From IMG/VR virus record IMGVR_UViG_3300017917_001123, positions 1-64,000 of that record: a stretch of 64,000 nt of DNA; one strand, given 5' to 3'. The notes below the pieces were generated by a model. The model searched no databases and was not told the origin of the DNA. It saw only the letters and a program-made list of their open reading frames with translations. The position numbers and the translations under genes were made by a program. The first letter of the stretch is position 1; each line of letters opens with the position of its first letter. Shown here piece by piece: positions 2,717 to 36,400 of this stretch.

Positions 2717-2717
2717 T

Positions 2718-2940: not shown

Positions 2941-2948
2941 TCGATTTT

Positions 2949-2972
2949 GAAAACTTGTTTCGGCAAGTTTTC
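2949..2972 (+). other. 10-bp UUCG tetraloop hairpin separating RNA modules
   Basis: GAAAACTTGT-TTCG-GCAAGTTTTC. Confidence 0.75.
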
Positions 2973-3214: not shown

Positions 3215-3273
3215 TTTTTATTTGAAATATAGGCAAAAGACTGTATAATTGTTTTTGAAAAGGAAAAGGCAAA

Positions 3274-3843: not shown

Positions 3844-3857
3844 AAACTAGGGCATTT

Positions 3858-3891
3858 AAATACAAGGGAGCATCAGGCTCCCTTTATTTTT
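3858..3891 (+). terminator. Intrinsic terminator-like hairpin
   Basis: AAGGGAGC-ATCAG-GCTCCCTT + T-rich tail. Confidence 0.6.
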
Positions 3892-4488: not shown

Positions 4489-4658
4489 CAGAACAGAAAA
4501 AATCTAAAAACCCTTTTATCAATGCCGCATTGGCCGCAAAGGCCGCCGCAAGTGCTGGAGTGCCAAATTCTAGGACAGCACCGGTACAGCAGGCAAAATT
4601 TAAGAATCAAGTAAGCGGAAATAAGCCAGCCCAGAGATCAGCTGGCCGCGGACGTTAA
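4485..4658 (+). CDS. Small basic protein (57 aa, ends AGRGR)
   Basis: ATG overlaps upstream stop; hand-translated MTEQKKSKNPFINAALAAK... Confidence 0.6.
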   Translation: MTEQKKSKNPFINAALAAKAAASAGVPNSRTAPVQQAKFKNQVSGNKPAQRSAGRGR

Positions 4659-4659
4659 T

Positions 4660-4733
4660 GCTCCTGTAGTATAAAGGCAGTACACTTCCTTGGTAAGGAT
4701 GAGACGCTGGATCGTTACCAGCCTGGAGCACCA
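4660..4733 (+). tRNA. tRNA-Thr (GGT)
   Basis: Acceptor GCTCCTG/CTGGAGC, anticodon loop TT-GGT-AA, atypical T loop ATCGTTA, ACCA. Confidence 0.88.
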
Positions 4734-5354
4734 TTATAGCTTTTTAATAGCGATTATAATATCGTCTTCTCTACCTTCAGCAATCCGCTTGCCGTAATAG
4801 GTATCGATCTCAAATTTCTCACCAAGCCCGTGTAAATGATTTTCTAAATGCGGAATGAAGTTCTCGGCTGTTTGAGTATTCACTACGTCTTCAATAAAGT
4901 AGACGCCACCCCTGGCTAAACGTGGCCAGTAGTTTTGAAAGGTCTGCCATTGGCTATTTGCCCTATGGTCGCCATCGTCAATAATGAAGTCCATTGTTTC
5001 TTCGCCAAACTGTGCTGCCAATGCTGGATCAAAAGCACTACAATTCCAATATAAACTAATTCGCTGGTCTTGCTCAATTTCCTCTTGGAAAGGTCTTCTC
5101 ACGGCGTAACCTCCAGCAATATCAAAACTGTAGTAATCAAAATCAGTAAAGTACTTGCTCCAAAGATATGCGCTACCGCCAATGCTAATTCCAATTTCTA
5201 ACATACGAATTTCTTCTGTACGCTTTGGTTCGAAATATTTTTCATAGAATGGCAAATAGCTGTGTCCAGAATCTGCGCTCTTGTCGGTAAAATCTAAACT
5301 GGTTTCACCGTATTGTGCTTTAAGTTCTTCGTTGATTTCGTGTAATGTCTTCAT
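4734..5354 (-). CDS. Class I SAM-dependent methyltransferase
   Basis: LEIGISIGGS, DFIIDDGDH, GGVYFIED; start moved to ATG 5354 (TAAATA upstream; longer ORF overlaps a tRNA). Confidence 0.85.
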   Translation of the reverse strand: MKTLHEINEELKAQYGETSLDFTDKSADSGHSYLPFYEKYFEPKRTEEIRMLEIGISIGGSAYLWSKYFTDFDYYSFDIAGGYAVRRPFQEEIEQDQRISLYWNCSAFDPALAAQFGEETMDFIIDDGDHRANSQWQTFQNYWPRLARGGVYFIEDVVNTQTAENFIPHLENHLHGLGEKFEIDTYYGKRIAEGREDDIIIAIKKL

Positions 5355-5381
5355 GCGAATATTTACTGGAGAGTCTAATAC

Positions 5382-5410
5382 TTGATCTTTTTCTTGAGTT
5401 TTCGTATAAT
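5382..5410 (+). promoter_or_regulatory. sigma70-type promoter for aberrant tRNA
   Basis: TTGATC-17-TATAAT, 7 nt before tRNA. Confidence 0.65.
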
Positions 5411-5417
5411 TAACTAT

Positions 5418-5518
5418 GCGGCTGTGAGCAAATAGGCAAAGCTCTCCACCCTTTGGGTCGAGGTCGGACACTGACTTAGTCAACGTCTTTGGAGGTTCAA
5501 GCCCTCCCAGCCGTACCA
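5418..5518 (+). tRNA. Non-canonical type II (Leu-like body) tRNA, collapsed TTT anticodon loop
   Basis: GCGGCTG/CAGCCGT-A-CCA; Leu-like D loop; T arm GGAGG-TTCAAGC-CCTCC; loop CC-TTT-GG; ~30-nt variable arm. Confidence 0.75.
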
Positions 5519-5561
5519 AATTCTTGATTTATAGATTTTTATATCTGTAAATATCCGAGAC

Positions 5562-5637
5562 GCCCTAGTAGCTCAGTTGGTAGAGCAACTGATTTGTAAT
5601 CAGTAGGTCCGCGGTTCGAGTCCGTGCTGGGGCACCA
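5562..5637 (+). tRNA. tRNA-Thr (TGT)
   Basis: Canonical cloverleaf, ACTGA-TT-TGT-AA-TCAGT, ACCA. Confidence 0.96.
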
Positions 5638-7075: not shown

Positions 7076-7149
7076 TCTTGTAATACAATACGCAAGGATT
7101 TATAATATATAAATACATTGTTAATGGTGCCAACAGGGCTGTTAACAAA

Positions 7150-7166
7150 CTTGCTTAATAAGGAGA
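7150..7166 (+). promoter_or_regulatory. ROSE-like RNA thermometer hairpin over dnaK SD
   Basis: CTTGCTT-AAT-AAGGAG, bulged G opposite SD. Confidence 0.55.
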
Positions 7167-7171
7167 AAAAT

Positions 7172-9082
7172 ATGTCAAAAATTATAGGTATTGACCTAGG
7201 TACAACAAACTCTTGCGTGGCTATCATCGATGGCCCAAATGCTAAAGTTATCGAAAACTCAGAAGGCGCAAGAACAACCCCTTCAATTATTGCTTACACT
7301 AACGAAGAAGTGCTCGTTGGCGCAACTGCCAAACGACAAGCAGTAACAAATCCAAAAAATACATTGTACGCCGTTAAGCGTCTTATTGGACGTAAGTTCA
7401 GTGAGAAAGAAGTACAAAAAGACATCGACTTGATGCCTTACAAAATTATTCAAGCAGACAACGGTGATGCTTGGGTAGAAGCAAACGGTCAAAAACTTGC
7501 TCCGCCACAAATTAGTGCTGAGGTTCTTCGCAAGATGAAAAAGACCGCAGAGGATTTTTTAGGTGAAGAAGTTACAAAAGCAGTTATTACAGTTCCAGCA
7601 TACTTTAACGACTCACAAAGACAGGCTACAAAGGACGCTGGTAAGATCGCCGGCTTGGAAGTACTCCGTATTATTAACGAGCCTACTGCGGCAGCTCTTG
7701 CTTATGGTGTTGATAAAGCTGATGGTAAAGACAGGAAAGTTGCTGTTTACGATCTTGGTGGTGGTACATTCGACATTAGCATCATTGAAATCGCGAATGT
7801 CGACGGTGATAAGCAGATTGAAGTTCTAAGCACCAACGGTGACACGTTCTTAGGCGGTGAAGACTTTGACCAACGCATCATGGACTATCTAGTAGCAGAG
7901 TTCAAAAAGGACAACGGCGTTGACCTAAAGAGTGATGTTCTTGCTCTTCAGCGTCTAAAAGAAGCCGCAGAAAAGGCAAAGATCGAATTGTCTAGCTCTG
8001 CTAGCACAGATGTTAACTTGCCTTACATTACTGCCGACGCAAGTGGTCCTAAGCACATGAACGTTAAGATCACTCGTGCTAAGTTTGAAAGTTTAGTTGA
8101 GGATCTAGTAGAACGCAGTCTAGAGCCATGCCGCATTGCACTAAAAGACGCAGGTCTAAGTGCCAGCGACATCGACGAAGTTATCCTAGTCGGTGGCCAG
8201 ACTCGTATGCCTAAGGTACAAGAAGCAGTTGAGAAGTTGTTTGGCAAGGCACCACGTAAGGATGTTAACCCAGACGAAGCAGTTGCTGTCGGCGCCGCAG
8301 TTCAAGGGCAAGTGTTAGGCGGTGGACGCACTGACGTTCTATTGCTTGACGTTACTCCATTGAGTCTTGGTATCGAGACGCAAGGTGGTGTTATGACTAA
8401 GATGATTAAGAAGAATACTACTATTCCGACTAAGCATAGTCAAACATACAGTACTGCCGAAGACAATCAGCCAGCAGTTACAATTAAAGTCTATCAAGGT
8501 GAACGTGACCTAGTTGCTTATAATAAACTATTGGGCGAGTTTAACTTAGAAGGCATTGATCCTGCTCCACGCGGTATGCCTCAAATTGAAGTTACATTCG
8601 ATATCGACGCAAACGGCATTCTTGACGTCCATGCTAAGGATAAGAAAACTGGCAAGGAAAAGAAAATTACTATCAAAGCAAGTTCTGGTCTAAGTGACGC
8701 AGAAATTGAAAAGATGGTACAGGAAGCCGAAGCCAATGCCGAAGCAGATAAAGAGGCAGTTGCCCTAATTAATCTTCGAAACGAAACCGACGTTCTAATC
8801 CACATGACTGAAAAGTTAATGAAGGAATTGGGCGAAAGCGGTGTTTCGCTAGACGAAGAAGATCAGGCAAAAGAGTCAATCGAAAAAGCCAAAGAAGCTC
8901 TAAAAGGCAACAACAAGTCAACTATTGAAAAAGCTCAAGACGAAGTTAAGGAATGGCACAAGAAGTTCCTACAAAAGTCTCAAGAGCAAAATGAGGCCAA
9001 CAAGCAAGAGTCCGAAATTGACAAGGGACAAAAGCCGGGCTACGAAAATGTAGTTGATGCCGAGTTTACGGAGAAATCTTGA
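7172..9082 (+). CDS. dnaK: Hsp70 chaperone DnaK
   Basis: [26 protein letters not shown]-terminal VDAEF; AAGGAG RBS. Confidence 0.97.
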
Positions 9083-15851: not shown

Positions 15852-16523
15852 ATGTACACAAGTGTTTATCGTTCAGCAGGCGAGATTAATACTGCTATGG
15901 CACGTGTCTATGGACACATGGGACTGGCAGTTATTACTTCAATGATTGTTAGTTTCTTTGTTGGCAATAGTGCCGCATTGATGGAGTTTTTCTTTTCTGG
16001 GGCAATGAAGTGGGTAGTTATTTTTGCTCCGCTGGTCGCAATCCTAGGTGTTAGTGTTGCTATGGAAAAAATGAGCAAAAGTGCTCTAACAATTTTCCTA
16101 CACGGTTTTGCCGCATTGATGGGCTTGAGTTTTGCTACAATTTTTGTAGTCTATAACCTAGGTAGCATTGTATCGGCATTCATGGCCGCCGCAGTATTGT
16201 TTGGCACTATGAGCTTCTATGGTTACTTTACTAAAAAGAATCTAGACTCAATTGGCTCATTCTTGCTTGTTGGTCTAATTGCGATCATCATTGCTAGTAT
16301 TATCAACATTTTTATTGGTAGCACAGTATTCCAAATGGTTATTAGTGCGATTGCTGTACTTGTGTTCTTGGGGCTAACTGCCTATGACACACAAAAAATT
16401 CGTGAGTTGGTCAGTGTCGACAGCGACGGTAAAGCAGAGATTATGGGTGCTCTTAGCCTATACCTAGACTTTATTAACTTGTTCTTGTCACTGCTTCAAC
16501 TGTTTGGTGGACGTAAGGATTAA
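15852..16523 (+). CDS. Bax inhibitor-1/YccA family membrane protein
   Basis: 7 TM; AYDTQKI, ALSLYLDFINLF. Confidence 0.92.
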   Translation: MYTSVYRSAGEINTAMARVYGHMGLAVITSMIVSFFVGNSAALMEFFFSGAMKWVVIFAPLVAILGVSVAMEKMSKSALTIFLHGFAALMGLSFATIFVVYNLGSIVSAFMAAAVLFGTMSFYGYFTKKNLDSIGSFLLVGLIAIIIASIINIFIGSTVFQMVISAIAVLVFLGLTAYDTQKIRELVSVDSDGKAEIMGALSLYLDFINLFLSLLQLFGGRKD

Positions 16524-19059: not shown

Positions 19060-19484
19060 AAGCAGAAAAGCCCGCAGAAGGAATTTTGAAAACCCACGAT
19101 TGGGGACACTCAAAGTGGTATCATGTTATCTGCGGCTGTGGTCAGCCCGATCATAGTCTTACAGTTGAAGTAGAAGCAGAGGATACAGGTGTTAACATCA
19201 ATACCTACGCAACTATTAAGACTGACTACTGGACTGAAACAGTTAAGCCAAATGTTGGCATGGATAACGAATGGCTAGAAGAATTTGATTGGGCATGGAA
19301 ATCTATCTTTAATAGCATCATTCGTAAAGTTAAATTAACTTGGCAACTGTGGACCAAAGGTTATATCCAGGCCGAAACAACTATCGCAATGAGCGAGCAA
19401 CAAGCTCTTAATTTTGCTGAAACTTTAAAGTCTGCTATTAAAGATGCCAACCAACTCCGAGAAGAACGTATCAAAAAGCCCTGA
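19056..19484 (+). CDS. Hypothetical protein
   Basis: Coupled ORF with CxC..H motif. Confidence 0.7.
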   Translation: MKAEKPAEGILKTHDWGHSKWYHVICGCGQPDHSLTVEVEAEDTGVNINTYATIKTDYWTETVKPNVGMDNEWLEEFDWAWKSIFNSIIRKVKLTWQLWTKGYIQAETTIAMSEQQALNFAETLKSAIKDANQLREERIKKP

Positions 19485-20013
19485 GCGACACACTTTCCAA
19501 AGAGAAGGTTACGTAAAACGCCAGGCAGAAAAGGGCGAACCTGTCAATGAGGCATACGTCGACATGTTCGATAAAATCCTTGAACAGGAAGAACACAAGT
19601 TCGACGAACCAGAATCACGCAAAGACAACCTAGAATGGGATTTGCGTTCTACTGAATGGATCCTTGAAAAGGCTCGTGCTAAAGAGTCGTATGCCCAAAA
19701 TATCTATGCGGCATTGTGTAATACCGAATGGCAACGTTTGGATGTTATGCCCATTTTAAAGGACCAACGTTGGTCTTGCTCCTGGCGCTATGCTGGAGGT
19801 ATTGTGGCAGATATGCGACAAGAGGGCGACTACATTGATTGGTACTGCTCTGGAATGGGCGGGCTCAACATGGAATACGACGGCAAAGAAACTAACGAGC
19901 AATGGCAAAAGCGAACTGGCTACGTTCCAGAAAGCGTAGTTACTGACGAAATTCGGGCAGATTTCCAAAAGCTAGGTTGGATTTTGGTTGAATCCGACGA
20001 CGATTCTGCTTGA
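19444..20013 (+). CDS. Hypothetical phage protein
   Basis: YAQNIYAALCN...WSCSWR...YIDWYCSG. Confidence 0.75.
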   Translation: MPTNSEKNVSKSPERHTFQREGYVKRQAEKGEPVNEAYVDMFDKILEQEEHKFDEPESRKDNLEWDLRSTEWILEKARAKESYAQNIYAALCNTEWQRLDVMPILKDQRWSCSWRYAGGIVADMRQEGDYIDWYCSGMGGLNMEYDGKETNEQWQKRTGYVPESVVTDEIRADFQKLGWILVESDDDSA

Positions 20014-20038
20014 CAAATACCAAAACATCTCTTATAAT
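20010..20038 (+). promoter_or_regulatory. sigma70 promoter
   Basis: TTGACA-17-TATAAT. Confidence 0.8.
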
Positions 20039-20090
20039 ATAATTGTTAGCTTGATTAAGCGACCCGAGAAATCGGTTTTTTAACTTTGAA

Positions 20091-21110
20091 ATGGAGATGT
20101 CCAAAATGGCTAAAACTGCCGCTAGCACTACCTTGAACCCTTACGTGACTTCTAAGTCCGCTGTGGTCCCACTAGTTTCTGTAGCAACCACGCTCGCAAA
20201 GAAACTAAAATTTAATCCCCAAAAATTTGAGAAAAATAAATTCAACAAGTTTGCTTGGGTTGATCCTAACCTTATCGATGTGAATTTTGGTTCTCAGCGT
20301 TGGCCCGACGAACCCCATATCGGAAAACTTGTAAAGAAGTTTAATCCTTACAAATGTACTCCCCTAGTTTGTGTTTACAGAACTGACCTTGGTCGTTATC
20401 GAGTTTGTGATGGTCTTCAACACGGATCTGGCATGATTGTCACATTCTTTGGTTGCCTTAACAACGGGCTCGAAGTTCCAATCTGGTACGTCGAAGCCGA
20501 CGACGAGTTTGTTGAACACGATATCTTCCTTGCTCTTAACCGCGATAACTTGCCTATGGCCAAGTACTTTATCCATGACCAAGAAGTTAAGATGAAGGTT
20601 CCTAAGGCTGTAGAAATTGAACGTCTTGTTAAACGAGCAGGCGCATTTACTGCCTATAATAGTCGCAAGCCCGGTGCTATTACTCACATTAGCGACTTGT
20701 ACACTGGTCATAAAGTTTTGGGCAAGGACTGCCTACAAAAAGCTATCGAATGCCTGCGTGACTATTTCCCGGACGACAAAATTCATACTGCGTCGATGCT
20801 AGGTATTGGTAAGGTCTTCCTTCTTCTTAAAGAGCAAGGTTTGCTTACTGACGAAATTATTAGCGAAGTTGGTGGCGCATTGTTTGCTAATTTTGAAGAC
20901 AGTGATCGACTTCACCTTGATATCAAAGACGAATTCCAAAAAACTTATCCGTCAAACTACAAAGGTATGAACGCAATGGAGAAAGTTGCGTCCGGTGTGA
21001 TTGATGTCTACGAGCAGTATTACGGCAAACCGATTGGTATTGACAAGCCTTTTGACATTACTATGCCTATTTTGGCTACTGTTAAAGATGAGGATTTAGT
21101 AAATGCCTAA
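20091..21110 (+). CDS. ParB/Srx-like domain protein
   Basis: SQR...Y.VCDGLQH...F..LN pattern. Confidence 0.6.
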   Translation: MEMSKMAKTAASTTLNPYVTSKSAVVPLVSVATTLAKKLKFNPQKFEKNKFNKFAWVDPNLIDVNFGSQRWPDEPHIGKLVKKFNPYKCTPLVCVYRTDLGRYRVCDGLQHGSGMIVTFFGCLNNGLEVPIWYVEADDEFVEHDIFLALNRDNLPMAKYFIHDQEVKMKVPKAVEIERLVKRAGAFTAYNSRKPGAITHISDLYTGHKVLGKDCLQKAIECLRDYFPDDKIHTASMLGIGKVFLLLKEQGLLTDEIISEVGGALFANFEDSDRLHLDIKDEFQKTYPSNYKGMNAMEKVASGVIDVYEQYYGKPIGIDKPFDITMPILATVKDEDLVNA

Positions 21111-21522
21111 CTTGTATCCTAAGTACGATCCTGCTACTTACGTTACAAGAGACTTATTCCGCAAGGTTGTAGAAACTAAAGATCTTCGCTACGTCTGGGC
21201 ATATAAAAATGCCCAGAAGTGGGGAGTAGATTACGAACAGTTTCGCAATCTTTGCGGAACTCACTGTGCGTGTTGCGGCAGTGAGTTAGACTACGGTCTT
21301 GGAAAAAATAACGTAAACAAGTCAGATATAAACACACCGAGTACTGATCATAAAATTCCTCGCAGTTTGGACGAATCTAAAACTAACGATATTAGTAATC
21401 TTTGGATTATTTGTAACAGATGTAATACTTTAAAATCATCTGCTACTCAAGACGACATCCATAGATACAAAAAAATTGTCGAAGCCTTAGAGTCTTTCAG
21501 TATTGACAAAACCAAAACATGA
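21103..21522 (+). CDS. HNH endonuclease
   Basis: CACC...STDHKIPRS...NLWIICNRCN.LK. Confidence 0.85.
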   Translation: MPNLYPKYDPATYVTRDLFRKVVETKDLRYVWAYKNAQKWGVDYEQFRNLCGTHCACCGSELDYGLGKNNVNKSDINTPSTDHKIPRSLDESKTNDISNLWIICNRCNTLKSSATQDDIHRYKKIVEALESFSIDKTKT

Positions 21523-21531
21523 TGCTACAAT
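21503..21531 (+). promoter_or_regulatory. sigma70 promoter (leaderless mRNA)
   Basis: TTGACA-17-TACAAT-6-ATG. Confidence 0.7.
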
Positions 21532-21537
21532 TATATC

Positions 21538-21966
21538 ATGACTAAGAAACTTGACCGCAAAACTGTAGAAATTGGTAAGAAGCGTATTCCGCTTCGCAAG
21601 CTTCTACATGGCAAAGAAATCCGCGAAGCCGCAAAAGCTCTCGAAGATTTCCGTTTAGGACTAAATGAGCAAGAGCTCCTTTATGGAGCCAAGCTCACTG
21701 TTAAAATGGACAGTTACGGAGAAGCGGTATTGTATGCTCATCGTTTGGAGACAGACAAAGAGTATGCTGATCGGATTGAAAAGGCTCGAATTGCGGCCGA
21801 ACAAAAAGCCGAACGTGAACGTAAACGTAAGCTAATGGAGGTAGAACGAGCTGAACGAGCTAAGGAAATTCAAAAGCAAAAAGCTCTTGAAAGCATCCTA
21901 TCTATCGCAAAAGCAAACGGTTTGGGCAATGAAGAATTGGAAAAATTGCTCAAAGCATCCAATTGA
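21538..21966 (+). CDS. Hypothetical coiled-coil protein
   Basis: 142-aa ORF. Confidence 0.75.
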   Translation: MTKKLDRKTVEIGKKRIPLRKLLHGKEIREAAKALEDFRLGLNEQELLYGAKLTVKMDSYGEAVLYAHRLETDKEYADRIEKARIAAEQKAERERKRKLMEVERAERAKEIQKQKALESILSIAKANGLGNEELEKLLKASN

Positions 21967-21991
21967 CAAAGTGGTAAAAAGGTTGTATAAT
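21963..21991 (+). promoter_or_regulatory. sigma70 promoter
   Basis: TTGACA-17-TATAAT. Confidence 0.8.
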
Positions 21992-22025
21992 ATATACATA
22001 CAGTTAAACAACGGAGTAAACAAAT

Positions 22026-23234
22026 ATGGCAACTAAAGCACCAGCAGTTAAAAAGACTCGAGTTACTAAGGCTCAAGTTCAGGCACATCGTGCTAACGCA
22101 AAACGAGATATGAGCCCAAAATGGGATGATGTAGAGAATCTTTCTGCTGATGATTTTGCCCGAAAGTTCCGGCAAGCAATGGATTGGTATCGTTTGGAAA
22201 CTACTGCCAAAGATCTCAAGCCTAATGTTATTAACTGGATGAGCCGTAACGATTATTCTAAGGCAGATATCCAAGCATTTAAAAAGACCAAAGACAACCG
22301 CTGTTCCGGTACTATGGGTGCCATTGCTTCTTGTTTGCTCAAAGGTATGCCAGCACAACGCAAGGACTTTAACGAAGGCCGAGATACTGCTGAATGGCTT
22401 AAGGATGCTATTGCTAAGGTTATTTCGGAAGGCAAAGACGATATTGATGAGGACGAGGACGCACCTAAGGTCGAAAAGCCTGTAGTCTATGTTCCTAGCA
22501 TCCAAGAACGTCTGCGTGATGCGGCCGGTCAAATGAGCGAAGAAATTGACTATGCCATTGACGAGTGGGTTGTTGATCCTGATAAGTTTGATCCAAAGGC
22601 ATTTAAGATTGTTAGCCTGCTCCGCGGTAAAGGTGTCAAGGCCGCACATGCTCGTATTATTAAAAGTTTTTACGAGCGTAGCCTTGCCGATTTCGAAGAA
22701 CTTCAGCAAAAAGGTTGTGATGAGCAACTAGTAGAAGCATACGAACACGTTAGCAAGAAGAACATTAAAAAGATGTACGAGTTCTTGCTCGGTGTTATGT
22801 CGGCTTGCGATCAAATTGTAGGCGAAGCTAAGTTGAACAAGAAGCCTCGTGCTAAGAAAGTTAAGCCCGCAGAAGAACTGGTTAAGAAGCTCAAGTTCAA
22901 AGCAACTGACGACAAGCTAGGTGTTACTTCTGTTCCGCCTGCTCAGCTAGTTGGTGCTCAGGGTGCCGTTGTGTATAACACCAAGACTCGAAAGCTGGGT
23001 ATCTACATTTCAATGAATAGCTCAGGACTTGAAGTTAAGGGAACTAGCATCGGTAACTTTACTGCTAAGTCTACTCAAAAGACTTTGCGTAAGCCCGAGC
23101 TACAACTTCGAGAGTTCAAAGACCAAAATACTCAGAAGCGTGTAACCGATTGGTTTGCTAAGATCAAGGCTACTGAAATTGCTCTCAATGGTCGCCTTAA
23201 CGCAGAAACTATGATCCTAAAGGTGTTTAAATGA
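22026..23234 (+). CDS. Hypothetical phage protein (402 aa, Lys-rich)
   Basis: GGAG RBS, long ORF. Confidence 0.85.
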   Translation: MATKAPAVKKTRVTKAQVQAHRANAKRDMSPKWDDVENLSADDFARKFRQAMDWYRLETTAKDLKPNVINWMSRNDYSKADIQAFKKTKDNRCSGTMGAIASCLLKGMPAQRKDFNEGRDTAEWLKDAIAKVISEGKDDIDEDEDAPKVEKPVVYVPSIQERLRDAAGQMSEEIDYAIDEWVVDPDKFDPKAFKIVSLLRGKGVKAAHARIIKSFYERSLADFEELQQKGCDEQLVEAYEHVSKKNIKKMYEFLLGVMSACDQIVGEAKLNKKPRAKKVKPAEELVKKLKFKATDDKLGVTSVPPAQLVGAQGAVVYNTKTRKLGIYISMNSSGLEVKGTSIGNFTAKSTQKTLRKPELQLREFKDQNTQKRVTDWFAKIKATEIALNGRLNAETMILKVFK

Positions 23235-24352: not shown

Positions 24353-24599
24353 CGAACGCTATCGTGCTATTAAATGGGCAGAACAGCTTTGTCGAGATCT
24401 CATGGATCCTAGCAAAACTCCTAGAGTGCCGAAAACTATTCGGCAACGGGCTTACAGCGTTCTGCGGCATTTTCCCGAAGAATACTATTTGGCAATGTTA
24501 GCAGAAGCAAGGCCAGATATTATAGAACGAAGAGGTAAACCATTTGATCCTCTGTACAAAATGGTTAAAGATTACGAATTTAAAAAGGAAGAAAAATGA
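24339..24599 (+). CDS. Hypothetical phage protein
   Basis: [10 protein letters not shown]...LRHFP. Confidence 0.75.
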
Positions 24600-25216
24600 A
24601 CCTAGTACCAATGGTAGTTGAAAAGACCAGTCAAGGCGAACGTGCTTATGACATTTACAGCCGCTTACTCAAAGAGCGCATTGTTTTCCTAAACGGCCCT
24701 GTAGATGATCACAGCGCAAACTTGATCGTAGCACAGATGCTGTTCTTGGAAAGCGAAGATCCTACTAAGGACATTAACTTCTACATTAATAGCCCAGGTG
24801 GACTGGTTACTGCTGGTTTGAGCATTTATGACGTTATGCAGTTCGTTAAATGCGATGTAGCAACCTATGTTATGGGTCAAGCGTGTTCAATGGGTTCGTT
24901 CCTGGCACAGGCAGGTGCCAAAGGCAAGCGTTATGTGTTGCCCGAATCACGCACAATGATTCACCGTGTTAGCTCAGGTACTCCAGGTACCAAAGGTAGT
25001 GTTCACGTTCAAGAACTACAATTTGAAGACGCTAAACGCACTTTTGAAGAAAGCCAGCGCATTAATAAGCGTCTAACTGAACTGTATGTGCGCCACAATA
25101 CCGCAGGTAAGACCTACGAAGAAATGTTCGAAGCGATGAAATTTGATACATTTTTGGGCTCCGAAGAAGCGGTTGCTTGGGGTCTAGCAGACCACGTTAT
25201 CAGCAAGCACGAATAA
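24596..25216 (+). CDS. clpP: ATP-dependent Clp protease proteolytic subunit
   Basis: [19 protein letters not shown], catalytic SMG and MIH. Confidence 0.95.
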
Positions 25217-26711: not shown

Positions 26712-27263
26712 ATGACTTGGATCATTGATAAAACATTTGAATTCTGCTATGGTCACAGAGTTCACACACAAACATTAAACGGCGAATATGCCGCTGACCT
26801 AAAATGCGCTTGTCGCCATCTTCATGGACACGAAGGCAAGATGCAGGTATTCCTTACAGCACCGCAACTAGATAAAACTGGTATGGTTACTGACTTTAGA
26901 CACCTAGAATGGCTAAAGAAATGGATCAATACATATATTGATCATCAGTTTGTTATTGATAGGAACGATCCACTTTATGATAAAATTATTGGCAATCGTG
27001 GGCTTGTGCCTGTACATATTCCTGATACTGATCATGTCGCCGGATGGCATTTGGACCTCACTGGATTGGAGTCAAACTCTCCGGAGTATGAATATTACGA
27101 AGGGTTCATGGTAGTAGACTTTGTTCCAACTTCCGAAAAGCTCAGTGCTTGGATGGCTGAACTTGTAGAAGCCAAAATGAAGAAGCTCGGAGTAACTGTA
27201 CATCACATCGATTGGTGGGAAACTCCAAAATCTCGCTCTGTATTTTACCGAGACGGCTTGTAA
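26712..27263 (+). CDS. queD: 6-carboxytetrahydropterin synthase QueD-like
   Basis: GHR...CRHLHGH, GMVTDF, DH, PTSE, WET. Confidence 0.9.
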   Translation: MTWIIDKTFEFCYGHRVHTQTLNGEYAADLKCACRHLHGHEGKMQVFLTAPQLDKTGMVTDFRHLEWLKKWINTYIDHQFVIDRNDPLYDKIIGNRGLVPVHIPDTDHVAGWHLDLTGLESNSPEYEYYEGFMVVDFVPTSEKLSAWMAELVEAKMKKLGVTVHHIDWWETPKSRSVFYRDGL

Positions 27264-28867: not shown

Positions 28868-29602
28868 ATGCTGAAAATAAAAAATCTAACCGCAGTAGCA
28901 CACGAACAACAAGTACTAACTGACATCAACTTACAAGTCGAAGAAGACGAAGTCCATGCGATCATTGGCCCAGAAAAAGCTGGAAAAACAGCCCTAATGT
29001 ACGCACTTGTTGGGTTACCTTATATAGAGGTAGCTGAAGGAACTATACACTATAAACGTAAAAAAATAAACGCTATGCCTATGCATGAGCGTAGTTTGAG
29101 CGGCATTGTTGGTGTATTTCAAGAAATGATCGAAGTGCCTAATTTAACAAATTGGGAGCTCTTAGAAGCTGTTTTAAAATATCGCAAAGATCCAAGAAAC
29201 ATAGACGATCTAAAAGAACTATATGTAACTCATTGCTTAATGCTAGGGCTAGATCCAATCCACGGTGATTTAGAAGCATCAAGCGACACAATGGACTATG
29301 AGCAAGCAGTTAAAAACGAACTGCTGATAATGTTCATGCTAAACCCTAAACTAGCACTAATTGATAACTTTGATGAAAAGTTAGACGAAGAAAATAAAAA
29401 GTTGCTAGCCGAAAGCATTGCTGATATGGCACACGCCGGTGGCCGAGCAACTATTGTATTTTCAAAAAACAAAGCAGTATTAGAAACAATCAATCCTACT
29501 CATGTACACGTTATGGTTGATGGAAAGCTAGTACTATCTGGTGGAAAAGAATTATTACAAAGGATAGAAGAAGATGGGTATTCAGAGCTTTCTGCAAGCT
29601 GA
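28868..29602 (+). CDS. SufC-like ABC ATPase (degenerate motifs)
   Basis: EVHAIIGPEKAGKT, PTHVHVMVDGKLVLSGG.EL...E..GY; Walker B DN, no signature or His. Confidence 0.75.
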   Translation: MLKIKNLTAVAHEQQVLTDINLQVEEDEVHAIIGPEKAGKTALMYALVGLPYIEVAEGTIHYKRKKINAMPMHERSLSGIVGVFQEMIEVPNLTNWELLEAVLKYRKDPRNIDDLKELYVTHCLMLGLDPIHGDLEASSDTMDYEQAVKNELLIMFMLNPKLALIDNFDEKLDEENKKLLAESIADMAHAGGRATIVFSKNKAVLETINPTHVHVMVDGKLVLSGGKELLQRIEEDGYSELSAS

Positions 29603-30404
29603 AAAGGGTGATCCGGATTGGCTGTTTAGTCCAGATGAATATTTTGGAAAACAATTTAAACTATCGGACGCAAATACTATAGAGCTAAAGGACGGAAGGA
29701 CCGATAGCATTACTCTACGCCTAAGTCCTAACGAATCAGGAATGCTAGCCAAGCATCTTCGTATTGATGTTAGGGAAGAAGCAACTCTCGACTTAATTGT
29801 TATTAACGAATCTAGTCCCAAAACACAGCAGGTCTTTATCTACGATATTAAAATTCGTGAAGGCGGCCTTTTAAACCTAGGGATCTTTGCCAAGGGCGGA
29901 AAGTTTAACAAACATATATTTCAAGTAAGCATTGAAGACGGTGGAAATTTTGCCAGCTATGGTTACATTAGCAACAACGACGGCGGCGATACTGAGGTCA
30001 TTACCAAAGTCTTTCAACAGGGCGTACATTCATTGTGTACGCAGTTAATTGGAGCCCAGGCCGGAAAAGACAGTCAAACAGTCTATCAAGGAATGGTTCG
30101 AATTGACGGTGAAGCAGAACTTGCTGAAGCTGGCTTAGAAAGCGTTAACATTGTTACAGGAGATAACGGTCGTTGCTGGAGTAGACCAGAAGTGTTGAGC
30201 GAAACAATTACAGCAAAGACCCGATACGGAAGCCAGACAACTTGTTTAGATAGCAACATTACCTATTATCTAGCAAGTAAGGGGTTGCCACCAGAAGTAT
30301 CTCAAAAGGTTGTACTTAACAGCTTTCAAACTCCAATCTTTAACCTTGTTAAACAGGAAGATATTCGAGAAGAAGTAGAACAGTTATTCAATACGCAAGA
30401 ATAA
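29574..30404 (+). CDS. SufD/SufB-like beta-helix protein
   Basis: YQG.VRI..A..A, SRPE, YYLASKGL. Confidence 0.7.
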   Translation: MGIQSFLQAEKGDPDWLFSPDEYFGKQFKLSDANTIELKDGRTDSITLRLSPNESGMLAKHLRIDVREEATLDLIVINESSPKTQQVFIYDIKIREGGLLNLGIFAKGGKFNKHIFQVSIEDGGNFASYGYISNNDGGDTEVITKVFQQGVHSLCTQLIGAQAGKDSQTVYQGMVRIDGEAELAEAGLESVNIVTGDNGRCWSRPEVLSETITAKTRYGSQTTCLDSNITYYLASKGLPPEVSQKVVLNSFQTPIFNLVKQEDIREEVEQLFNTQE

Positions 30405-30482: not shown

Positions 30483-33400
30483 ATGGCAACTACTTCATCA
30501 AATAGACTAATAATTAACCTTGGTTCGCAAGCAAACGATGGTACAGGTGACGCAATTAGAGCGGCATTTGACAAGGTTAATCAAAACTTTGAGACAATTT
30601 TCAACGTAGCAGGTATCGGTTCGGGCCTGTTATTCACTAAACTAGCAGATGCTCCAAGATTGCTGTCGGCCAACAAAATGTTGGTTACAGACGCAACAGG
30701 TTTAACTGTAACACAAATGTCTATAGTTGGTGCCCAGGGCATCCAAGTAACTGTAGACCAAGGCCAAAAGCGTGTTTTAATTGACGCAACAGTAACAAAC
30801 TTAGTTAACGATCCTAACCCAGTTCTTTCTAATAACTTGAGCGGCGGTGTTGTTAATCGCGGTATAAATTTTGCTGATCCAGTTGATGATCAAGACATCG
30901 CAACAAAGAAATGGATCTACGATAACTTCCTAAATCGCGATTCTAACTACCAATACATTTCAAGTACAAACCCAATCACAGGTGCCAATGTTACATCTAC
31001 GATCGTAGAAGGTAGCACACTACGCCACAATATCCAAATTCAGCCTACAGGTGTAAACACAGCATCTAACGCAGGAAAGGTTATTACACTATTTGACAGC
31101 GACGGTGTTAGCCTAAAAGACTTTGATGTGTCAGTAGGTGCTTGGAGACCAAGCCACGTAACTCGTAAAGATTATGTTGATACAAAGATTTCTTTACAGG
31201 GTATCGACACCATTGATCCAGAGACAGGACAAATTAATCCTAGCTTTGGTCAGATGACCGGACCTCTATACCTATCGAGAGATCCGCGAGAACAAGACCC
31301 AGGCAACGTAGCCGCAACAAAGGCCTATGTCGACTCTGTAGGTTTTCCAAGCCGTCAAAACTTTTATGTAAGTTTGAATGGTAGTGATGCTCGTTATGAT
31401 ATTCCAGCATACAAGCGAGGACGTTCTTTTGCTTGGGCTTTCCGTACAGTTAACAAAGCCGCTCAGGCCGCATTACAGTATTCCAAAGCATCTGAAATTA
31501 AGCTAGGTGTTTACCAGCGTGTTATTACTTCTAACAACTACAAAACTCCTGTTGAGATTTTAAGTATTGGTCCAGGAACAATTTCTGGAACATATAAAAT
31601 TAGTGTAACCTACACAGGCGGAAACGGTACTGATCCTTTCATTGAAAGAAGTATTCGTCCAGGACAGTTCTTACAAGGTATTAGTACAAACGCAATTGGT
31701 GAAATTCTAAACGTTGCTTTAGAGCCAGCAAGTAACGTCGAAGAATACTATGAAGTCCGTTTAGTCGACTACGCAGATACATTCGAATCACCTATTACTC
31801 CTAGCGACCTAGCAGGTGAAGTAACATTTACTCTGTTTGAGCCAAACTTAATTGAGATTCCAGATTTCTGGATCGGTTATAAGTTTGTAGTCGATAGTGT
31901 AGCAGGCGGCGGTGTCGGTGAAATTATTGGATTCGATTTATACTACCACCCTAACGGTAACATTTATAACCAAGTTATTGTTAGAATGAGCGAGCCATTA
32001 AGTAGCACAAACATTATTAGTGGTGACAACTGGCACGTTTATTCTGGTTACTTCAGCGTTGGCGAATCTTTACGCTACGGTCAAAAGTATAACAAACTAG
32101 AAATTTCTATTCTTGTTGAGTCTGGCGAATTTAACGAACAGCTACCGATTAGAATTGGCGACAACATTTCTGTTAAAGGTGATGAATTCCGTCGTACAAT
32201 GATCAAGCCAGCCTACGTTAGAGGTACAGCACGTTGCGGTATTTCTACAAGTAAGTGGGCTAACATTTGGTTCCGCAGAGACACGCAGATTGACGGTATT
32301 ATTGTTACACAATTAAACACATCAACTGATTATGCGGCTCTAACTACAGCAACTCCAGATGGTGTAACAAACGATGCTTCAACAGAAGTAATCACATTTA
32401 CACTAGGCTCAGGTACTGCTGATCCAGACTGGATTAAGAAAGTCTTTATTGGAGCAGGTGGCCGAGGTGAAATTAAAGCAGTTCTAGGTAATACATTCAC
32501 GGTTGACATTGCTGAAAACGACAACGGTATTAGAAGAATCGATAGTGCGGCACCTATTGCCGCAGGTGATTGGAGCATTTATGAACCATACAACTTTGGT
32601 TACCATTACCTAAGAGATGCTAGCCGTCCATTAAACTTCTTAGCAGGTCCTAACCCAGGTGGTTACAACTTCGCTTCAAAGATTCTATTAGACAACATCG
32701 AGTTTATTAAGTCCGAAGTAATTGGTTGGATCGACCAAACATACAGTGGCGGATTTACATATAACGTAGCTGACTTCCAACGCAACACTGGATTGTTAGT
32801 CGATGCGGTTGCTCAAGATTTATTATTCAGCGGAACAAGCCAAGCAACATTTGCGGGCTTGTTAAATTGGAATCGAAACGGCGTACAATCTGCCTTTGCT
32901 GGCGGTGTAACTATTGCTTCAAATGCTGTAACATACATTAAAGAATTAGCACAGAAAGTTGTCCAGAAAGATTTAACAGGTACAAGATACCAAAGTGCTG
33001 TAACTCAAACAACATCTGGCATTGGAGCGGCAACTCCAGCAGAAGCATCTACAATCGCTGCCGACATAGATGTTATTCTAAATATTTTCTTGAACGGAAC
33101 AGCTGATGTTCAAGATACAATTATTCCAAACGGATTAACTAAGAGTTCAGATCCTGATGTACAGAATGCTCACGATTTGTTACAAGCAAACAAGCTCTAC
33201 ATCCAAGCAGAAGCTATTGCCTTTGTTGAAGCAACCAAAGCTAATGGATTTACATACGATCAAAACAAATACACTCAAAATTTTGGATTTATTGTTGACG
33301 CAGTAAGTACAGACCTTCTATACGGTGGTAATAAACAATCTGTCCAACTTGGAACATATTACTGGAACTTTGATGGCAGTTCATCAGCAATTGCAAACGA

Positions 33401-36400
33401 ACTTTCACAAACAGTTGCGGCTTATAACTACATCAAATCAATTCTGCCAGATATCATCCAAGGTACCGCTCTAGCAGTAACACAACAAAATACTGTTCCT
33501 CAAGTTATTATTGGCTACGGTCCAGGAGATGCTTCTGCTGTAACACAAGCACAGGCTAAGATTGATGTTGTTACTAACATTACTTCTAACGGTCCAAGTG
33601 TGGCTAGTGCTCAAAGCACATTACCGTTAACAAGAAGCACTGATCCAGATATTATCAACGGAGCAATTTTACTATCAGCAAACAGAACATTTATTATTGC
33701 TGAAACTATTGCGTTTGTTAATAATTCTTTCTTAACAGGATTTGTTTACGATAGAGAAACTTGCCGTAGAGACATTGGCTTAATTGTCGATGCGTTAGCA
33801 TTTGACTTAAAGAACGGTGATATTAACTCATCAATTAACGCGGCTGATAGCTATTACGCAGGCAATGTTCAACAAGTTCTTCAAAACGAACTAGCACAAA
33901 CTGTGGGCGCAATCGGTTATATTAATACTCTAGCGCAACAACTATTTGATCAAACTCCTATTACAACACTATACGGTTTTGTTCCACAGAGAATAGACAC
34001 TATTATTGGTGAAGTAGGGGCAAAGGCTCAAGTTACCAACCTAACTACAGCAATGCAGGGTATCTTAAACAACGATCCTGCGTTCAACCCACCTAAGTAT
34101 AACGACGAAATGGACATCTTCTTAATGAACGATGCGACCATGTTACGTTACTTAGGCGGTAACGGTCACGGTGGCTTTATGAAGGTACTTGACCCAGAAG
34201 GACAAATTAAATCTAAGTCACCATATACTCAGACATGTTCATCATTCTCACAGAGTATTGGCCGACACAGATTTGCTGGTGGTTTCTTTGTTGACGGATT
34301 CTGCGGTAACTTGCCATTAGTTACAGCAGCCGGTACAGCAAGTCCAGATACAAACGGTAACTTAATTTACATTCCAGTAACTGGCGTGAGACGTTTACCT
34401 GTATTCCCAACTTACTTTATTCACGAAGGTGTTAAGTACGAAGCGGACTACATGCAGAATTATGACCCAGTTAACCAAACTGGTACTCTTGTTCTAAACC
34501 CAAACAACCCAGGTGGTATTAGTTCCGTAAGTGTTAACAGCGGAAATACACAAAACGAATTTAAACCGAACGTTGCTCAACTACCAGTAACATTTAGTTC
34601 TCCAGGCACACCTGGTGGTGCTACTGCTCGTGGTTATGCTGTAACTAACGCATCTGGTAATATACAAACCATTGTTATCACATTCCCAGGTGTAGGATAT
34701 GTAACAGAACCAAGTGTTAGCCTAGGCGGTGCTACGTTTAACTTTATTATCGACGGCGGTGCTATTACATCAATGTCTGTCAACTACGGCGGTATTGGTT
34801 ATACAACAGGTACACAAATTAATATTGCAAGTCCAGGCGGTGCCGGGTTAACTGCTACCGCAACAATTACAGGTGTTGACGGACTTGGCGCAATTACTTC
34901 TATCAATTTAGTATCAGGCGGTACAGGATACACTAGTGTTCCAACTGTTACATTTGGTCGTCAAGTATTCAGCGCAAACTTAGTAAACGGCTTTATTGGC
35001 AATTTACCATCAAAACTAGAACTAATTACTGCTGGTAACCGTTCTATGTTAGCCAACGACTTTACACAGTTAAACGATTTAGGCTATGGTATTTTTGCTA
35101 CCAACGGTGGATTCATCGAAAACGTTTCGATGTTCACTTACTACTGCTATACCTCATACTACGCACTGAACGGTGCTATTCTAAGAACTATTACAGGTTC
35201 TACAGCTTACGGTACTTACGGTCTAGTCGCAGAAGGTTCAAACCCATTAGAGGTACCAACTGCGGTTACAATGTCAGACGAATTAACACAGATTGCTACT
35301 GTTTATAATCAGGCTCCGTACATTAACGCCAAAGGCGGTGCTGACATTTATGTAACACTAGACAGCACCTACGGTTACCCTCCATACTCTAATGGGGAAA
35401 TTGAGATCAATCACAACGGTATTAGAAAGACATATTCTCTAAGATCTGCTAAACAGATTTCTGGAAACTTATATGCTCTATCAATTGATTCAACCGGTGG
35501 TGGATTATACGCTATTGTTCCGAACGGCGAGCCGTTGACAATTCGTGTTAAGTTTATTTGGAGACTAGGCGGCTTAAATGCTAAGACATTAACTCGTCCA
35601 AGTACAGTTTTAACACTGGCGGAAAACTCAATTTACAACTACCGTATTCTAGAGTACACAGACTTAGGTAGTGACTATGCGTTAGCTGAAGCTGATCAGT
35701 CATATGACTACATTCAACTAACTCCATACAGTCAGAGTAACCTATATCGCCAAGGTGTTGGTCGCCCAACTATCAGCGTTGCTGGTAGTGGTTACACTTC
35801 GACAACTACACAGTATGGTGTAACATTTGACAGTCCTCCATCAAAGACTGCGGTAGTTAACGGTGTTCAGGGAACTGTTGATAGTCCAGTAACACAGTTA
35901 TCGATCGCAAGTTCTAGCGGAGCAATTCACCCTGGTATGAGAATTACTGGTGCTGGCGCTATTGCTAACCAGTACGTAACTTGGGTGAGCTTGGATAGAT
36001 CTATTATTCAAACAAGCCAGGCACAGGTTTGGTCGACTGCAAGTGCTACACTAACATTTGTTGGTACTACCGCAACTGGTTATGCCAAGGCCAACGGAAC
36101 AAGCATTACTGGAATCACAATTACTGATCCCGGTACTGGTTACGACACAGCGCCAGGTGTTACAATCGTACCCGGAAGTGGTGTACAAGCTCAGGCAACT
36201 GTTTCCTTAAGCGGTACAAGCGGAACTAACATTGTTAAGGTTCTTCCTTTAAATGGACAAGATACTGCTCGTATTAACATTGGACTAACAAGCCCAACTC
36301 CATACTATTACGTATTTGGTTACGAAGGTCAGACTTATAAGATTACAGATTATAAGACTCCTGTTCAAACAGGTCAAGCATGGGGCGAAATTCAAATTTC

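What the first reader, a model, noticed from the sequence alone, without database searches (positions are those of the whole stretch)
20010..21531. ParB-like + HNH two-gene cassette bracketed by near-identical promoters
Seen: TTGACAAATACCAAAACAT (20010) and TTGACAAAACCAAAACAT (21503) flank overlapping ParB/Srx-like and HNH genes. Known: ParB-like NTPase plus HNH is the architecture of GmrSD/SspE-type modification-dependent nucleases. Inference: a phage-borne anti-competitor or host-DNA-targeting system, inserted by recombination between promoter repeats; the genome also encodes a DNA MTase and QueD that could mark self.
Basis: partly seen in the sequence, partly recalled or inferred. Interest (0 to 1): 0.6.

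Follow-up and report, generated by a model that had tools for sequence, protein, structure and literature searches.

The report
Mobile ParB-like plus HNH nuclease cassette
A giant freshwater phage carries a conserved two-gene nuclease module, a ParB-like nucleotide-switch protein plus an HNH DNA cutter, which in some phages are one fused protein and which moves between phage genomes at strong early promoters; what it cuts is unknown.

Summary
Consensus sigma-70 promoters lie at 20010-20038 and 21503-21531, with a third at 21963-21991. The first two flank two overlapping genes.

- The 339-aa protein has no direct Pfam hit. Its model has a ParB/Srx fold, and its family profile matches Pfam DUF6551 (hhalign 99.9%). 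It keeps the QR and FxxxN motifs, but DGQHR reads DG(L/Q)QH.
- The 139-aa protein is an intact zinc-finger HNH.
- The two genes are neighbours in all 40 or so relatives with enough sequence. At least nine relatives encode them as one fused protein.
- The family appears only in viral and metagenomic contigs. Both genes are under strong purifying selection.
- Relatives with 50-78% identical flanking genes have an empty site holding a single promoter. That promoter's -35 half matches the window's first two promoters and its -10 half matches the third.
- Phages that share no other gene with this genome carry 78-81% identical copies of the cassette.

This fits promoter-mediated (PeSL-like) module shuffling. 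The architecture resembles GmrSD/SspE, but the membership tests fail. I found no evidence for self-marking of the phage DNA: QueD is present but no TGT/DpdA. The likeliest role is an early, nucleotide-gated nuclease aimed at non-self DNA. This is untested.

The parts
19444..20013 (+). Upstream flanking gene (189 aa, unknown function). Its stop codon overlaps the -35 hexamer of P1.
   Evidence: Homologues at 47-78% identity lie directly next to the 402-aa gene in relatives L044, L046, L047, L051 and L052.
20010..20038 (+). Promoter P1, TTGACA-17-TATAAT. Its -35 hexamer and spacer resemble the single promoter found at the empty site in relatives.
20049..20081 (+). Conserved 5' leader: hairpin GCTT-GATT-AAGC (20049-20060), a GAAA-tetraloop hairpin (20064-75) and a T-run (20076-81).
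   Evidence: The leader is conserved in L077, L070 and L074, although their flanks are unrelated. The second stem changes by paired substitutions (CCGA/TCGG, CCTC/GAGG, CCTGC/GCAGG). Only 4 sequences were compared, and the folding z-score of the whole leader is not significant.
20091..21110 (+). Gene for the ParB/Srx-fold protein of the DUF6551/DGQHR type (339 aa, or 334 aa from the likely start at 20106). Motifs: Q69-R70, D107-G-L-Q-H111, F146..N150. It also has a C-terminal helical domain.
21103..21522 (+). HNH endonuclease gene (139 aa), overlapping the previous gene by 8 bases. C55, C58, D82-H83, N99, C104, C107 and N108 are invariant. Its last codons (IDKT) are also the -35 region of P2.
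21503..21531 (+). Promoter P2, TTGACA-17-TACAAT, which drives the next gene.
21538..21966 (+). Third inserted gene (142 aa, charged and helical, function unknown). Found only here and in L077; two 151-base contigs of run X2 match it exactly.
21963..21991 (+). Promoter P3, TTGACA-17-TATAAT. Its -10 hexamer and leader match the single promoter of the empty site in relatives. Its spacer belongs to another promoter sub-family (TGGTAAA).
22026..23234 (+). Downstream flanking gene (402 aa, phrog_11903, unknown function). It is conserved in T4-like and PA5oct-like phages.

Best explanation
The two genes encode one enzyme: a two-subunit DNA endonuclease that in some phages is a single chain.

- The larger part is a ParB/Srx-fold protein of the DUF6551/DGQHR type. 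By analogy it is a nucleotide-binding switch that also contacts DNA.
- The smaller part is a zinc-finger HNH nuclease that does the cutting.
- The operon is read by the host RNA polymerase from a consensus sigma-70 promoter, so the enzyme is probably made right after infection.

I think it most likely acts on DNA that is not the phage's own: the host chromosome, or co-infecting phages and other mobile elements. In that model the ParB-like subunit decides when and where the HNH cuts.

The module is an accessory unit that moves between large freshwater phages. In this genome it entered, together with a third small gene, by recombination within conserved early-promoter sequences. This is the PeSL-type module shuffling known from T4-type phages.

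Shown here: the folds and motifs, the obligate pairing and fusions, the restriction to phages, purifying selection, the empty sites and promoter junctions, and transfer between otherwise unrelated genomes.

Inferred: nucleotide binding, physical complex formation in the split form, early timing, and above all the target and biological role.
For: Fold and family
- The AF2 model has mean pLDDT 86.8.
- The top eight VIA matches to residues 53-169 are all ParB/Srx proteins, from pNOB8 ParB-N (Z 8.0), PadC (7.7), KorB (7.5) and Srx (6.1) down to SbnI (4.9). The Foldseek top hits are Noc, KorB and ParB.
- hhalign of the family profile against 20 DUF6551 proteins gives 99.9% probability, E 2e-34, over 246 columns.
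- Phage proteins with the ParB-CTPase fold joined to DUF6551 bind CTP or ATP (PMC12704722).

HNH
- PF01844 scores above its cut-off.
- The catalytic and zinc-binding residues are invariant in 23 homologues.

One functional unit
- The two genes are adjacent in every locus with enough sequence.
- Eight database proteins of 458-520 aa, and L017, are in-frame fusions of both whole proteins.
- The model of the L017 fusion has pLDDT 93.3 and pTM 0.86.

Selection
- dN/dS is 0.057 for the ParB-like gene and 0.10 for the HNH gene, at dS above 1.4.

Phage-only distribution
- 42 IMG/VR loci carry the family.
- The nearest Atlas clusters are viral.
- No relative was found in 185,579 prokaryote genomes, and there is no PADLOC hit.

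Mobility
- L044, L046, L047, L051 and L052 have empty sites with a single promoter.
- L070 and L074 carry copies 78-81% identical but share no other gene with this genome.
- Homology between copies starts right after the -10 hexamer and ends at the HNH tail, which doubles as a -35 hexamer.
- The PeSL mechanism is described in PMC2839356 and PMC4122927.

Sign of conflict
- The ParB-like subunit has a stem branch of 2.0 substitutions per site in the window's clade. Its HNH partner has no such branch.
Against: - No biochemical or expression data exist.
- The Arg of the DGQ(H/Q)R motif, which contacts the nucleotide in relatives, is an invariant His here, so nucleotide binding is not assured.
- No self-protection mechanism was found. 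There is no TGT/DpdA, and QueC gives only a weak match.
- The module is present in all three near-complete genomes examined, which would also fit a housekeeping role.
- Some natural fusions have lost HNH catalytic residues, so cutting may not always be the point.
- The complex prediction could not be run.
- The direction of the event, insertion here or deletion elsewhere, rests on parsimony.
Confidence: 0.5

Rival explanations
1. A selfish two-gene homing cassette. The HNH cuts cassette-less alleles in co-infecting relatives, with the ParB-like protein supplying DNA recognition. Repair then copies the cassette in, as with the free-standing Seg and Mob endonucleases of T-even phages. Any advantage to the phage is secondary (marker exclusion).
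For: - The cassette is present or absent between the same conserved genes in different relatives.
- L045 has a distantly related ParB-like plus HNH pair at exactly the same site, also bracketed by two promoter copies.
- Near-identical cassettes lie in otherwise unrelated genomes.
- The HNH protein is small and has no DNA-binding domain of its own.
Against: - At least six different genomic contexts were seen, rather than one target site.
- Purifying selection is strong and catalytic residues are invariant over deep divergence. The cassette is present in all three near-complete genomes, not sporadic or decaying.
- The junctions lie at generic promoter sequences, which points to homologous exchange rather than cleavage of a specific target.
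Confidence: 0.2
2. A housekeeping DNA-processing enzyme of the phage itself. It would resolve or trim replication and recombination intermediates, as an endonuclease VII-like enzyme does, or would act in repair, with the ParB-like protein loading it on DNA.
For: - The best PHROG match of the HNH is a family annotated endonuclease VII (8.7e-13). T4 endonuclease VII appears among the structural matches (Z 4.3).
- The module is conserved in all three near-complete genomes.
- Fused copies lie among replication and nucleotide-metabolism genes.
- Only two HNH genes occur in this genome.
Against: - The module is absent from the 101-141 kb fragments of relatives that cover this region (fragments, so weak evidence).
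- It sits in a variable early region behind a sigma-70 promoter, not in a conserved replication or late module.
- It has been transferred between unrelated phages.
- The burst of change in the ParB-like subunit is not expected for a housekeeping loader.
- PF02945 was not detected, although the control for that search also failed.
Confidence: 0.15
3. The ParB-like protein is mainly a DNA-binding regulator or clamp, like KorB, DndB or Noc. It would control transcription or DNA organisation, and the HNH would be an unrelated neighbour.
For: - The closest solved folds include the repressor KorB and Noc.
- Cassette promoters in several relatives carry a conserved palindrome between the -35 and -10 hexamers that could be an operator.
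- Some fusions have a degenerate HNH.
Against: - Repeated in-frame fusions with the whole HNH protein, and invariable adjacency, argue for one functional unit.
- The HNH catalytic residues are invariant in the split forms.
Confidence: 0.07

Closest known systems
GmrSD / BrxU / SspE (Type IV, modification-sensing nucleases: DUF262 ParB-like NTPase plus DUF1524 His-Me finger)
   Same: - An N-terminal ParB/Srx-fold domain with QR and FxxxN motifs and a DGQxx motif, followed by a helical region, then a beta-beta-alpha-Me nuclease.
- It exists both as two genes and as a fusion, as described for GmrS/GmrD (PMC4619093).
   Different: - No PF03235 or DUF1524 match.
- The Arg of DGQQR is His.
- The nuclease is a CxxC zinc-finger HNH (PF01844).
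- There is no global structural match. BrxU matches only at Z 3.5-4.2, over the helical part.
- It is encoded by lytic-type large phages, not by bacterial defence islands.
Pfam DUF6551 (PF20188), the DGQHR-type ParB-CTPase-fold proteins of phages and bacteria
   Same: Full-length profile-profile homology (99.9%). Members of this group from phages were shown to bind CTP or ATP (PMC12704722).
   Different: - The window protein does not reach the Pfam model on its own.
- DGQHR is replaced by DG(L/Q)QH.
- This sub-family has an obligate HNH partner. The two canonical DUF6551 loci examined have none nearby.
PeSL regulatory cassettes of T4-type phages (promoter-early plus stem-loop)
   Same: - Strong sigma-70 consensus promoters with attached stem-loops bracket accessory genes in a variable early region.
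- Indels between relatives begin and end in these motifs.
- Relatives show stem-loops between the -35 and -10 hexamers (PMC2839356, PMC4122927).
   Different: - Seen here in a 331-kb freshwater phage that is only distantly linked to T4-type phages.
- In the window the stem-loops lie in the transcribed leader.
- Promoter and terminator activity and mini-circles were not tested.
Free-standing HNH homing endonucleases of T-even phages (Mob family)
   Same: A small HNH gene with its own promoter, inserted between conserved genes and absent from close relatives.
   Different: - It always comes with, or is fused to, a ParB-like partner.
- It has many insertion contexts.
- It has been under long-term purifying selection.

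Membership tests
GmrSD / SspE (Type IV restriction) | N-terminal DUF262 / GmrSD_N domain (PF03235) | tested here: not met
   None of the 23 family members hits PF03235 even at E up to 10. Only sub-threshold PF03235 hits appear, in more distant DUF6551 relatives.
GmrSD / SspE (Type IV restriction) | QR, (I/V)DGQQR and FxxxN motifs (PMC4619093) | tested here: inconclusive
   QR (Q69, R70) is invariant and FxxxN is present (F146..N150). DGQQR reads DGLQH in the window and DGQQH in the family, with Arg replaced by an invariant His.
GmrSD / SspE (Type IV restriction) | C-terminal DUF1524-type His-Me finger nuclease | tested here: not met
   The nuclease matches PF01844 (HNH) and has two CxxC zinc pairs. 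No DUF1524 match was found.
GmrSD / SspE (Type IV restriction) | ParB/Srx fold of the N-terminal domain, coupled to a nuclease as one unit, split or fused | tested here: met
   Fold. Adjacency in about 40 loci and nine in-frame fusions.
GmrSD / SspE (Type IV restriction) | Cleavage that depends on DNA modification or phosphorothioate, and NTP hydrolysis | not testable with these tools
   Needs purified protein and defined substrates.
GmrSD / SspE (Type IV restriction) | Encoded in bacterial or archaeal genomes as anti-phage defence | tested here: not met
   Only viral and metagenomic contigs carry it. No relative was found in 185,579 prokaryote genomes by signature peptides. No PADLOC model matches.
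DUF6551 (PF20188) | Match to the Pfam model above the gathering score | tested here: not met
   The window protein has no hit. One family member reaches E 0.0031, below the cut-off.
DUF6551 (PF20188) | Homology over the whole domain to bona fide members | tested here: met
   hhalign of A1 against A2, in which all 20 members hit PF20188 at E 0.001 or better: 99.9%, E 2e-34, 246 columns. The HMM search reaches these members at E 1e-10 to 1e-15.
HNH endonuclease (PF01844) | Pfam match above the cut-off, and an intact D-H...N...N catalytic core with zinc ligands | tested here: met
   26.9 bits against a cut-off of 21.4. C55, C58, D82, H83, N99, C104, C107 and N108 are invariant. Structural matches to Gme HNH (Z 5.7) and McrA (Z 5.6) in the fusion model.
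PeSL-type mobile regulatory cassette | Consensus sigma-70 promoter with an associated stem-loop, upstream of accessory genes in a variable region | tested here: met
   P1, P2 and P3. Leader hairpins. Palindromic spacers in the promoters of L002, L004, L008 and L011.
PeSL-type mobile regulatory cassette | Indels between related genomes bounded by the motifs | tested here: met
   The single promoter of the empty site in L044, L046 and L047 equals the -35 half of P1 and P2 plus the -10 and leader half of P3. L045 has another insert between two copies of the promoter.
PeSL-type mobile regulatory cassette | Measured promoter and terminator activity; excised mini-circles | not testable with these tools
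   Only contigs were available for the sequencing runs. No circle junction was seen, and none could be expected from contigs.
Free-standing homing endonuclease | One defined target or insertion site shared by carriers | tested here: not met
   At least six different neighbourhoods were seen: next to ClpP, near the 402-aa gene, and the contexts of L070 and L074, among others.
Free-standing homing endonuclease | Cuts the cassette-less allele and is over-inherited in crosses | not testable with these tools
   Needs enzyme assays and a cultured phage-host pair.

The most novel reading that the evidence does not exclude
Large lytic phages carry their own 'offensive restriction' enzyme: a split or fused ParB-switch plus HNH nuclease, related in design to GmrSD/SspE but evolved independently. 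Its sensor subunit diversifies in bursts to retarget rival phages, satellites or host DNA. The module hops between unrelated phage genomes on promoter cassettes.
Probability: 0.25. Interest if true: 0.7.

Novelty: new variant of a known kind. Interest (0 to 1): 0.5.

Why it matters
- **Function for an unknown family.** DUF6551 has no known function. This work ties a phage-only branch of it to a nuclease partner by gene fusion, the strongest kind of genomic evidence for joint function. That gives a concrete, testable role, a nucleotide-gated nuclease, for a ParB-fold family that was recently shown to bind CTP or ATP.
- **Reach of promoter-mediated shuffling.** Promoter-plus-stem-loop module shuffling, described for T4-type coliphages and vibriophages, also seems to operate in uncultured 300-kb freshwater phages. 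Here it moves a whole enzyme system between genomes.
- **If the enzyme discriminates DNA.** A phage weapon that tells self from non-self DNA would be a counterpart, on the phage side, of bacterial Type IV restriction.

Tried and rejected
- **Direct family searches.** Pfam, PHROGs, PADLOC and NCBIfam gave nothing for the 339-aa protein. A profile search of PDB sequences gave only noise.
- **Cultured phages.** blastn and tblastn against 50,697 phage records found no relative of the cassette.
- **RNA.** Rfam has no match in 19800-22200. The leader's folding energy is not better than that of shuffled sequence (z -0.26).
- **Complex prediction.** Binding of the split proteins therefore rests on the fusions only.
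- **Cassette elsewhere in relatives.** A search of five relatives that lack it at this site found nothing. Those records are only 12-39% complete, so this shows little.
- **Self-marking by 7-deazaguanine.** QueD is present, no TGT/DpdA was found, and QueC is only weak. Phage DpdA can be very divergent, so its absence is not proven.
- **Endonuclease VII.** The PF02945 search was uninformative because its control also failed.
- **Sequencing runs.** Only contigs were available, and no RNA run. Two joints that would fit cassette-less relatives in the source pond have short sides of 22-27 bases, so I treat them as weak evidence.
- **Global GmrSD-like fold.** Not found for either model.
- **Rejected idea.** I considered that the P1-P2 identity is a recent target-site duplication. 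I rejected it because the closest relative with the same arrangement (L077) is at dS above 1.4 and has different spacers, while the motif TTGACAAAACCAA recurs at orthologous promoters in other relatives.
Full report
**Context.** The window is the first 64 kb of a 331,570-bp viral record that CheckV estimates to be 93% complete. It is a large phage of freshwater or pond origin. Around the finding it encodes Hsp70, ClpP, a Bax-inhibitor-1-like protein, UvdE, SufC/SufBD-like proteins, QueD, a DNA methylase and a 2788-aa protein. Almost all genes in this region lie on the + strand in a dense run of small ORFs.

**The observation.** Both quoted sequences are at the stated places.
- P1 at 20010-20038 is a perfect TTGACA-17-TATAAT.
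- P2 at 21503-21531 is TTGACA-17-TACAAT.
- They share 18 bases with a one-base indel. The spacer 10-mer they share occurs nowhere else in the genome.
- The window holds 8 strict + strand promoters of this kind against 0.3 expected. The whole genome holds 23 (both strands), which fall into spacer sub-families.
- The two genes, 20091-21110 and 21103-21522, overlap by 8 bases.
- The first gene probably starts at 20106.

**What the proteins are.** The 139-aa protein is an HNH nuclease. PF01844 scores above its cut-off. In 23 homologues the two CxxC pairs, D82-H83, N99 and N108 never vary.

The 339-aa protein hits no curated family directly. Three lines of evidence place it in the ParB/Srx superfamily.
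- Its AF2 model (pLDDT 86.8) has a domain at residues 53-169 whose eight best VIA matches are all ParB/Srx proteins, from pNOB8 ParB-N (Z 8.0), PadC (7.7), KorB (7.5) and sulfiredoxin (6.1) to SerK, Atu1540 and SbnI. The best Foldseek matches are Noc, KorB and ParB.
- An exhaustive profile search finds 779 relatives. The more distant ones carry Pfam DUF6551, with weak secondary hits to GmrSD_N, ParB_N and DndB.
- Profile-profile comparison with 20 DUF6551 proteins gives 99.9% probability and E 2e-34 over nearly the whole length.

The protein keeps the QR pair and the FxxxN motif that define DGQHR/GmrS-type domains (PMC4619093). The pentapeptide, however, is DGQQH in the family and DGLQH in the window's clade, with His in place of the usual Arg in all 23 sequences. 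The C-terminal helical half has no convincing structural match.

**They are one unit.**
- In about 40 loci from IMG/VR and metagenomes, every copy with enough downstream sequence is followed by the HNH gene. The two genes usually overlap or lie within 70 bases.
- In L003 and L023 one extra coupled gene lies between them.
- Eight representative proteins of 458-520 aa, and the 455-aa ORF of L017, are in-frame fusions of the whole ParB-like protein with the whole HNH protein. The fusions sit among phage replication and nucleotide-metabolism genes.
- The AF2 model of the L017 fusion is confident as a whole (pLDDT 93.3, pTM 0.86). It shows a ParB/Srx domain, a helical domain and an HNH domain. It has no global match to BrxU or SspE.
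- Both genes are under strong purifying selection: dN/dS is 0.057 and 0.10 against L077, with synonymous sites near saturation.

**Where it occurs.** The family is known only from viral and metagenomic contigs. None was found in 50,697 phage records or, by its signature peptides, in 185,579 prokaryote genomes. It is present once in each of three near-complete genomes of 300-331 kb that are only 38-43% identical in this protein. This genome has only one other HNH gene.

**How it came to be here.**
- In relatives whose flanking genes are 47-78% identical to the window's (L044, L046, L047, L051, L052), the 189-aa and 402-aa genes are direct neighbours. They are separated by 55-78 bases that hold a single promoter.
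- In L044, L046 and L047, the -35 hexamer and early spacer of that promoter (TTGACAAAACCAAA...) match P1 and P2. Its -10 hexamer and leader (TGTATAATATATACATAC...) match P3.
- The window therefore looks like that site with two modules set in: the cassette, and the 142-aa gene. Each junction lies inside a promoter.
- The last codons of the HNH gene (I-D-K-T) are themselves the TTGACAAAAC of P2. This tail is also present in copies that lie in unrelated contexts. The cassette thus carries at its 3' end a sequence that matches the resident -35 region.
- At the 5' end, homology among the window, L077, L070 and L074 begins right after the -10 hexamer. It covers a leader with two small hairpins, the second kept by paired changes, then a T-run and the ribosome-binding site.
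- L070 and L074 have ParB-like proteins 78-81% identical to the window's, yet none of their other 11-12 genes has any homologue in this genome.
- L045, a close relative by its flanks, has at the very same site a different and very distant version of the same gene pair, again between two promoter copies.
- In several relatives the cassette's promoter has a palindrome between the -35 and -10 hexamers that is maintained by paired changes.

All of this matches the PeSL elements of T4-type phages. Those are strong sigma-70 promoters with stem-loops, placed before, within or after the promoter, and recombination between them shuffles accessory genes (PMC2839356, PMC4122927).

The event is not recent. 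L077 has the same arrangement at dS above 1.4, and its two promoters share only TTGACAAAA. The P1-P2 identity in the window therefore reflects a conserved promoter sub-class or later exchange, not a fresh scar. Whether the empty site is ancestral rests on parsimony.

**A sign of conflict.** In the tree of the ParB-like protein, the window's clade (window, L077, L070, L074) is nested inside the family. It sits on a stem branch of 2.0 substitutions per site, against 0.05-0.5 elsewhere. The HNH tree has no such branch. Within the clade the ParB-like protein is then very conserved. One subunit was remodelled in a burst while its catalytic partner stayed the same. That is what one expects if the ParB-like part sets specificity.

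**Function.** Nothing here measures activity. I commit to a nucleotide-gated, two-part DNA endonuclease made early in infection and directed at non-self DNA, with confidence about 0.5. The grounds are:
- the consensus host-type promoter;
- the intact nuclease;
- the ParB-fold partner, whose relatives bind CTP or ATP (PMC12704722) and, in GmrSD, BrxU and SspE, license a nuclease;
- the restriction to phages, the mobility, and the burst of change in the sensor subunit.

The main rivals are a selfish homing cassette (0.2) and a housekeeping junction- or repair-type nuclease (0.15). QueD is present in all three large genomes, but no TGT/DpdA was found.

**Comparison with known systems.** The cassette works like GmrSD/SspE in design but fails their membership tests: no DUF262 or DUF1524 match, Arg replaced by His, a different HNH family, and phage rather than bacterial carriage. 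It is best filed as a divergent, HNH-coupled branch of DUF6551 that is carried on PeSL-like promoter cassettes.

**Limits.**
- Only contigs, and no RNA, were available from sequencing runs.
- The relatives that lack the cassette at this site are genome fragments.

Noticed in passing
L045:4113-6001: A relative whose flanking genes are up to 78% identical has, at the same site, a very distant version of the same pair. It is a 409-aa protein (hhalign against the family 80%, E 1.4e-5, motif NAQHR) plus an overlapping 173-aa HNH that lacks the first CxxC pair. The insert lies between two copies of the TTGACAAAACCA... promoter.
   Followed up: partly
L003:5031-5600 and L023:7002-7487: In some relatives an extra, translationally coupled gene (189 or 161 aa, no Pfam hit) lies between the ParB-like and HNH genes. 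L014 also has a gap of about 560 bases there, which I did not examine.
   Followed up: partly
L002, L004, L008, L011: about 80-115 bases upstream of the ParB-like gene: The cassette promoters carry a palindrome between the -35 and -10 hexamers (CAGGAyC-N4-GrTCCTG), kept by paired base changes in four variants. It could be a PeSL-type stem-loop or an operator.
   Followed up: no
window 20010, 21503, 21963; genome 219214, 219495, 220546, 222968, 285882: The consensus promoters fall into spacer sub-families: AAACCAA... at 20010, 21503 and 219214, and TGGTAAA at 21963 and four distant sites. This suggests promoter copies that spread or are co-regulated.
   Followed up: partly
P0033, P0038, P0040 (fusion proteins): Some natural ParB-like-HNH fusions have lost the catalytic His and/or zinc cysteines of the HNH domain, yet the reading frame is kept.
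   Followed up: no
window 19669-20002: In the source pond run, many contigs of related phages match this conserved part of the 189-aa gene and then diverge near 19847-19964. Two weak contig joints (19847 to 22179 and 19964 to 22454) would fit co-occurring relatives without the roughly 2.4-kb insert.
   Followed up: partly
window 7118-9082, 15852-16523, 24596-25216, 28868-30404: The phage encodes a full-length Hsp70 (PF00012, E 6e-258), a Bax-inhibitor-1-family membrane protein, ClpP, and SufC-like plus SufBD-like proteins. This is an unusual set of host-like proteostasis and Fe-S genes.
   Followed up: no
window 30483-41560: A 2788-aa ORF is followed by a 903-aa protein with He_PIG Ig-like domains. 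I did not examine them.
   Followed up: no
window 221-5637: Five tRNA genes (Gly-TCC, Asn-GTT, Thr-GGT, Pro-GGG with a long 101-base call, Thr-TGT) lie near the start of the record.
   Followed up: no
window 26712-27263: A QueD/PTPS homologue is conserved in all three large related genomes, without a detectable TGT/DpdA. Its role is unclear: a queuosine precursor or pterin pathway rather than DNA modification?
   Followed up: partly
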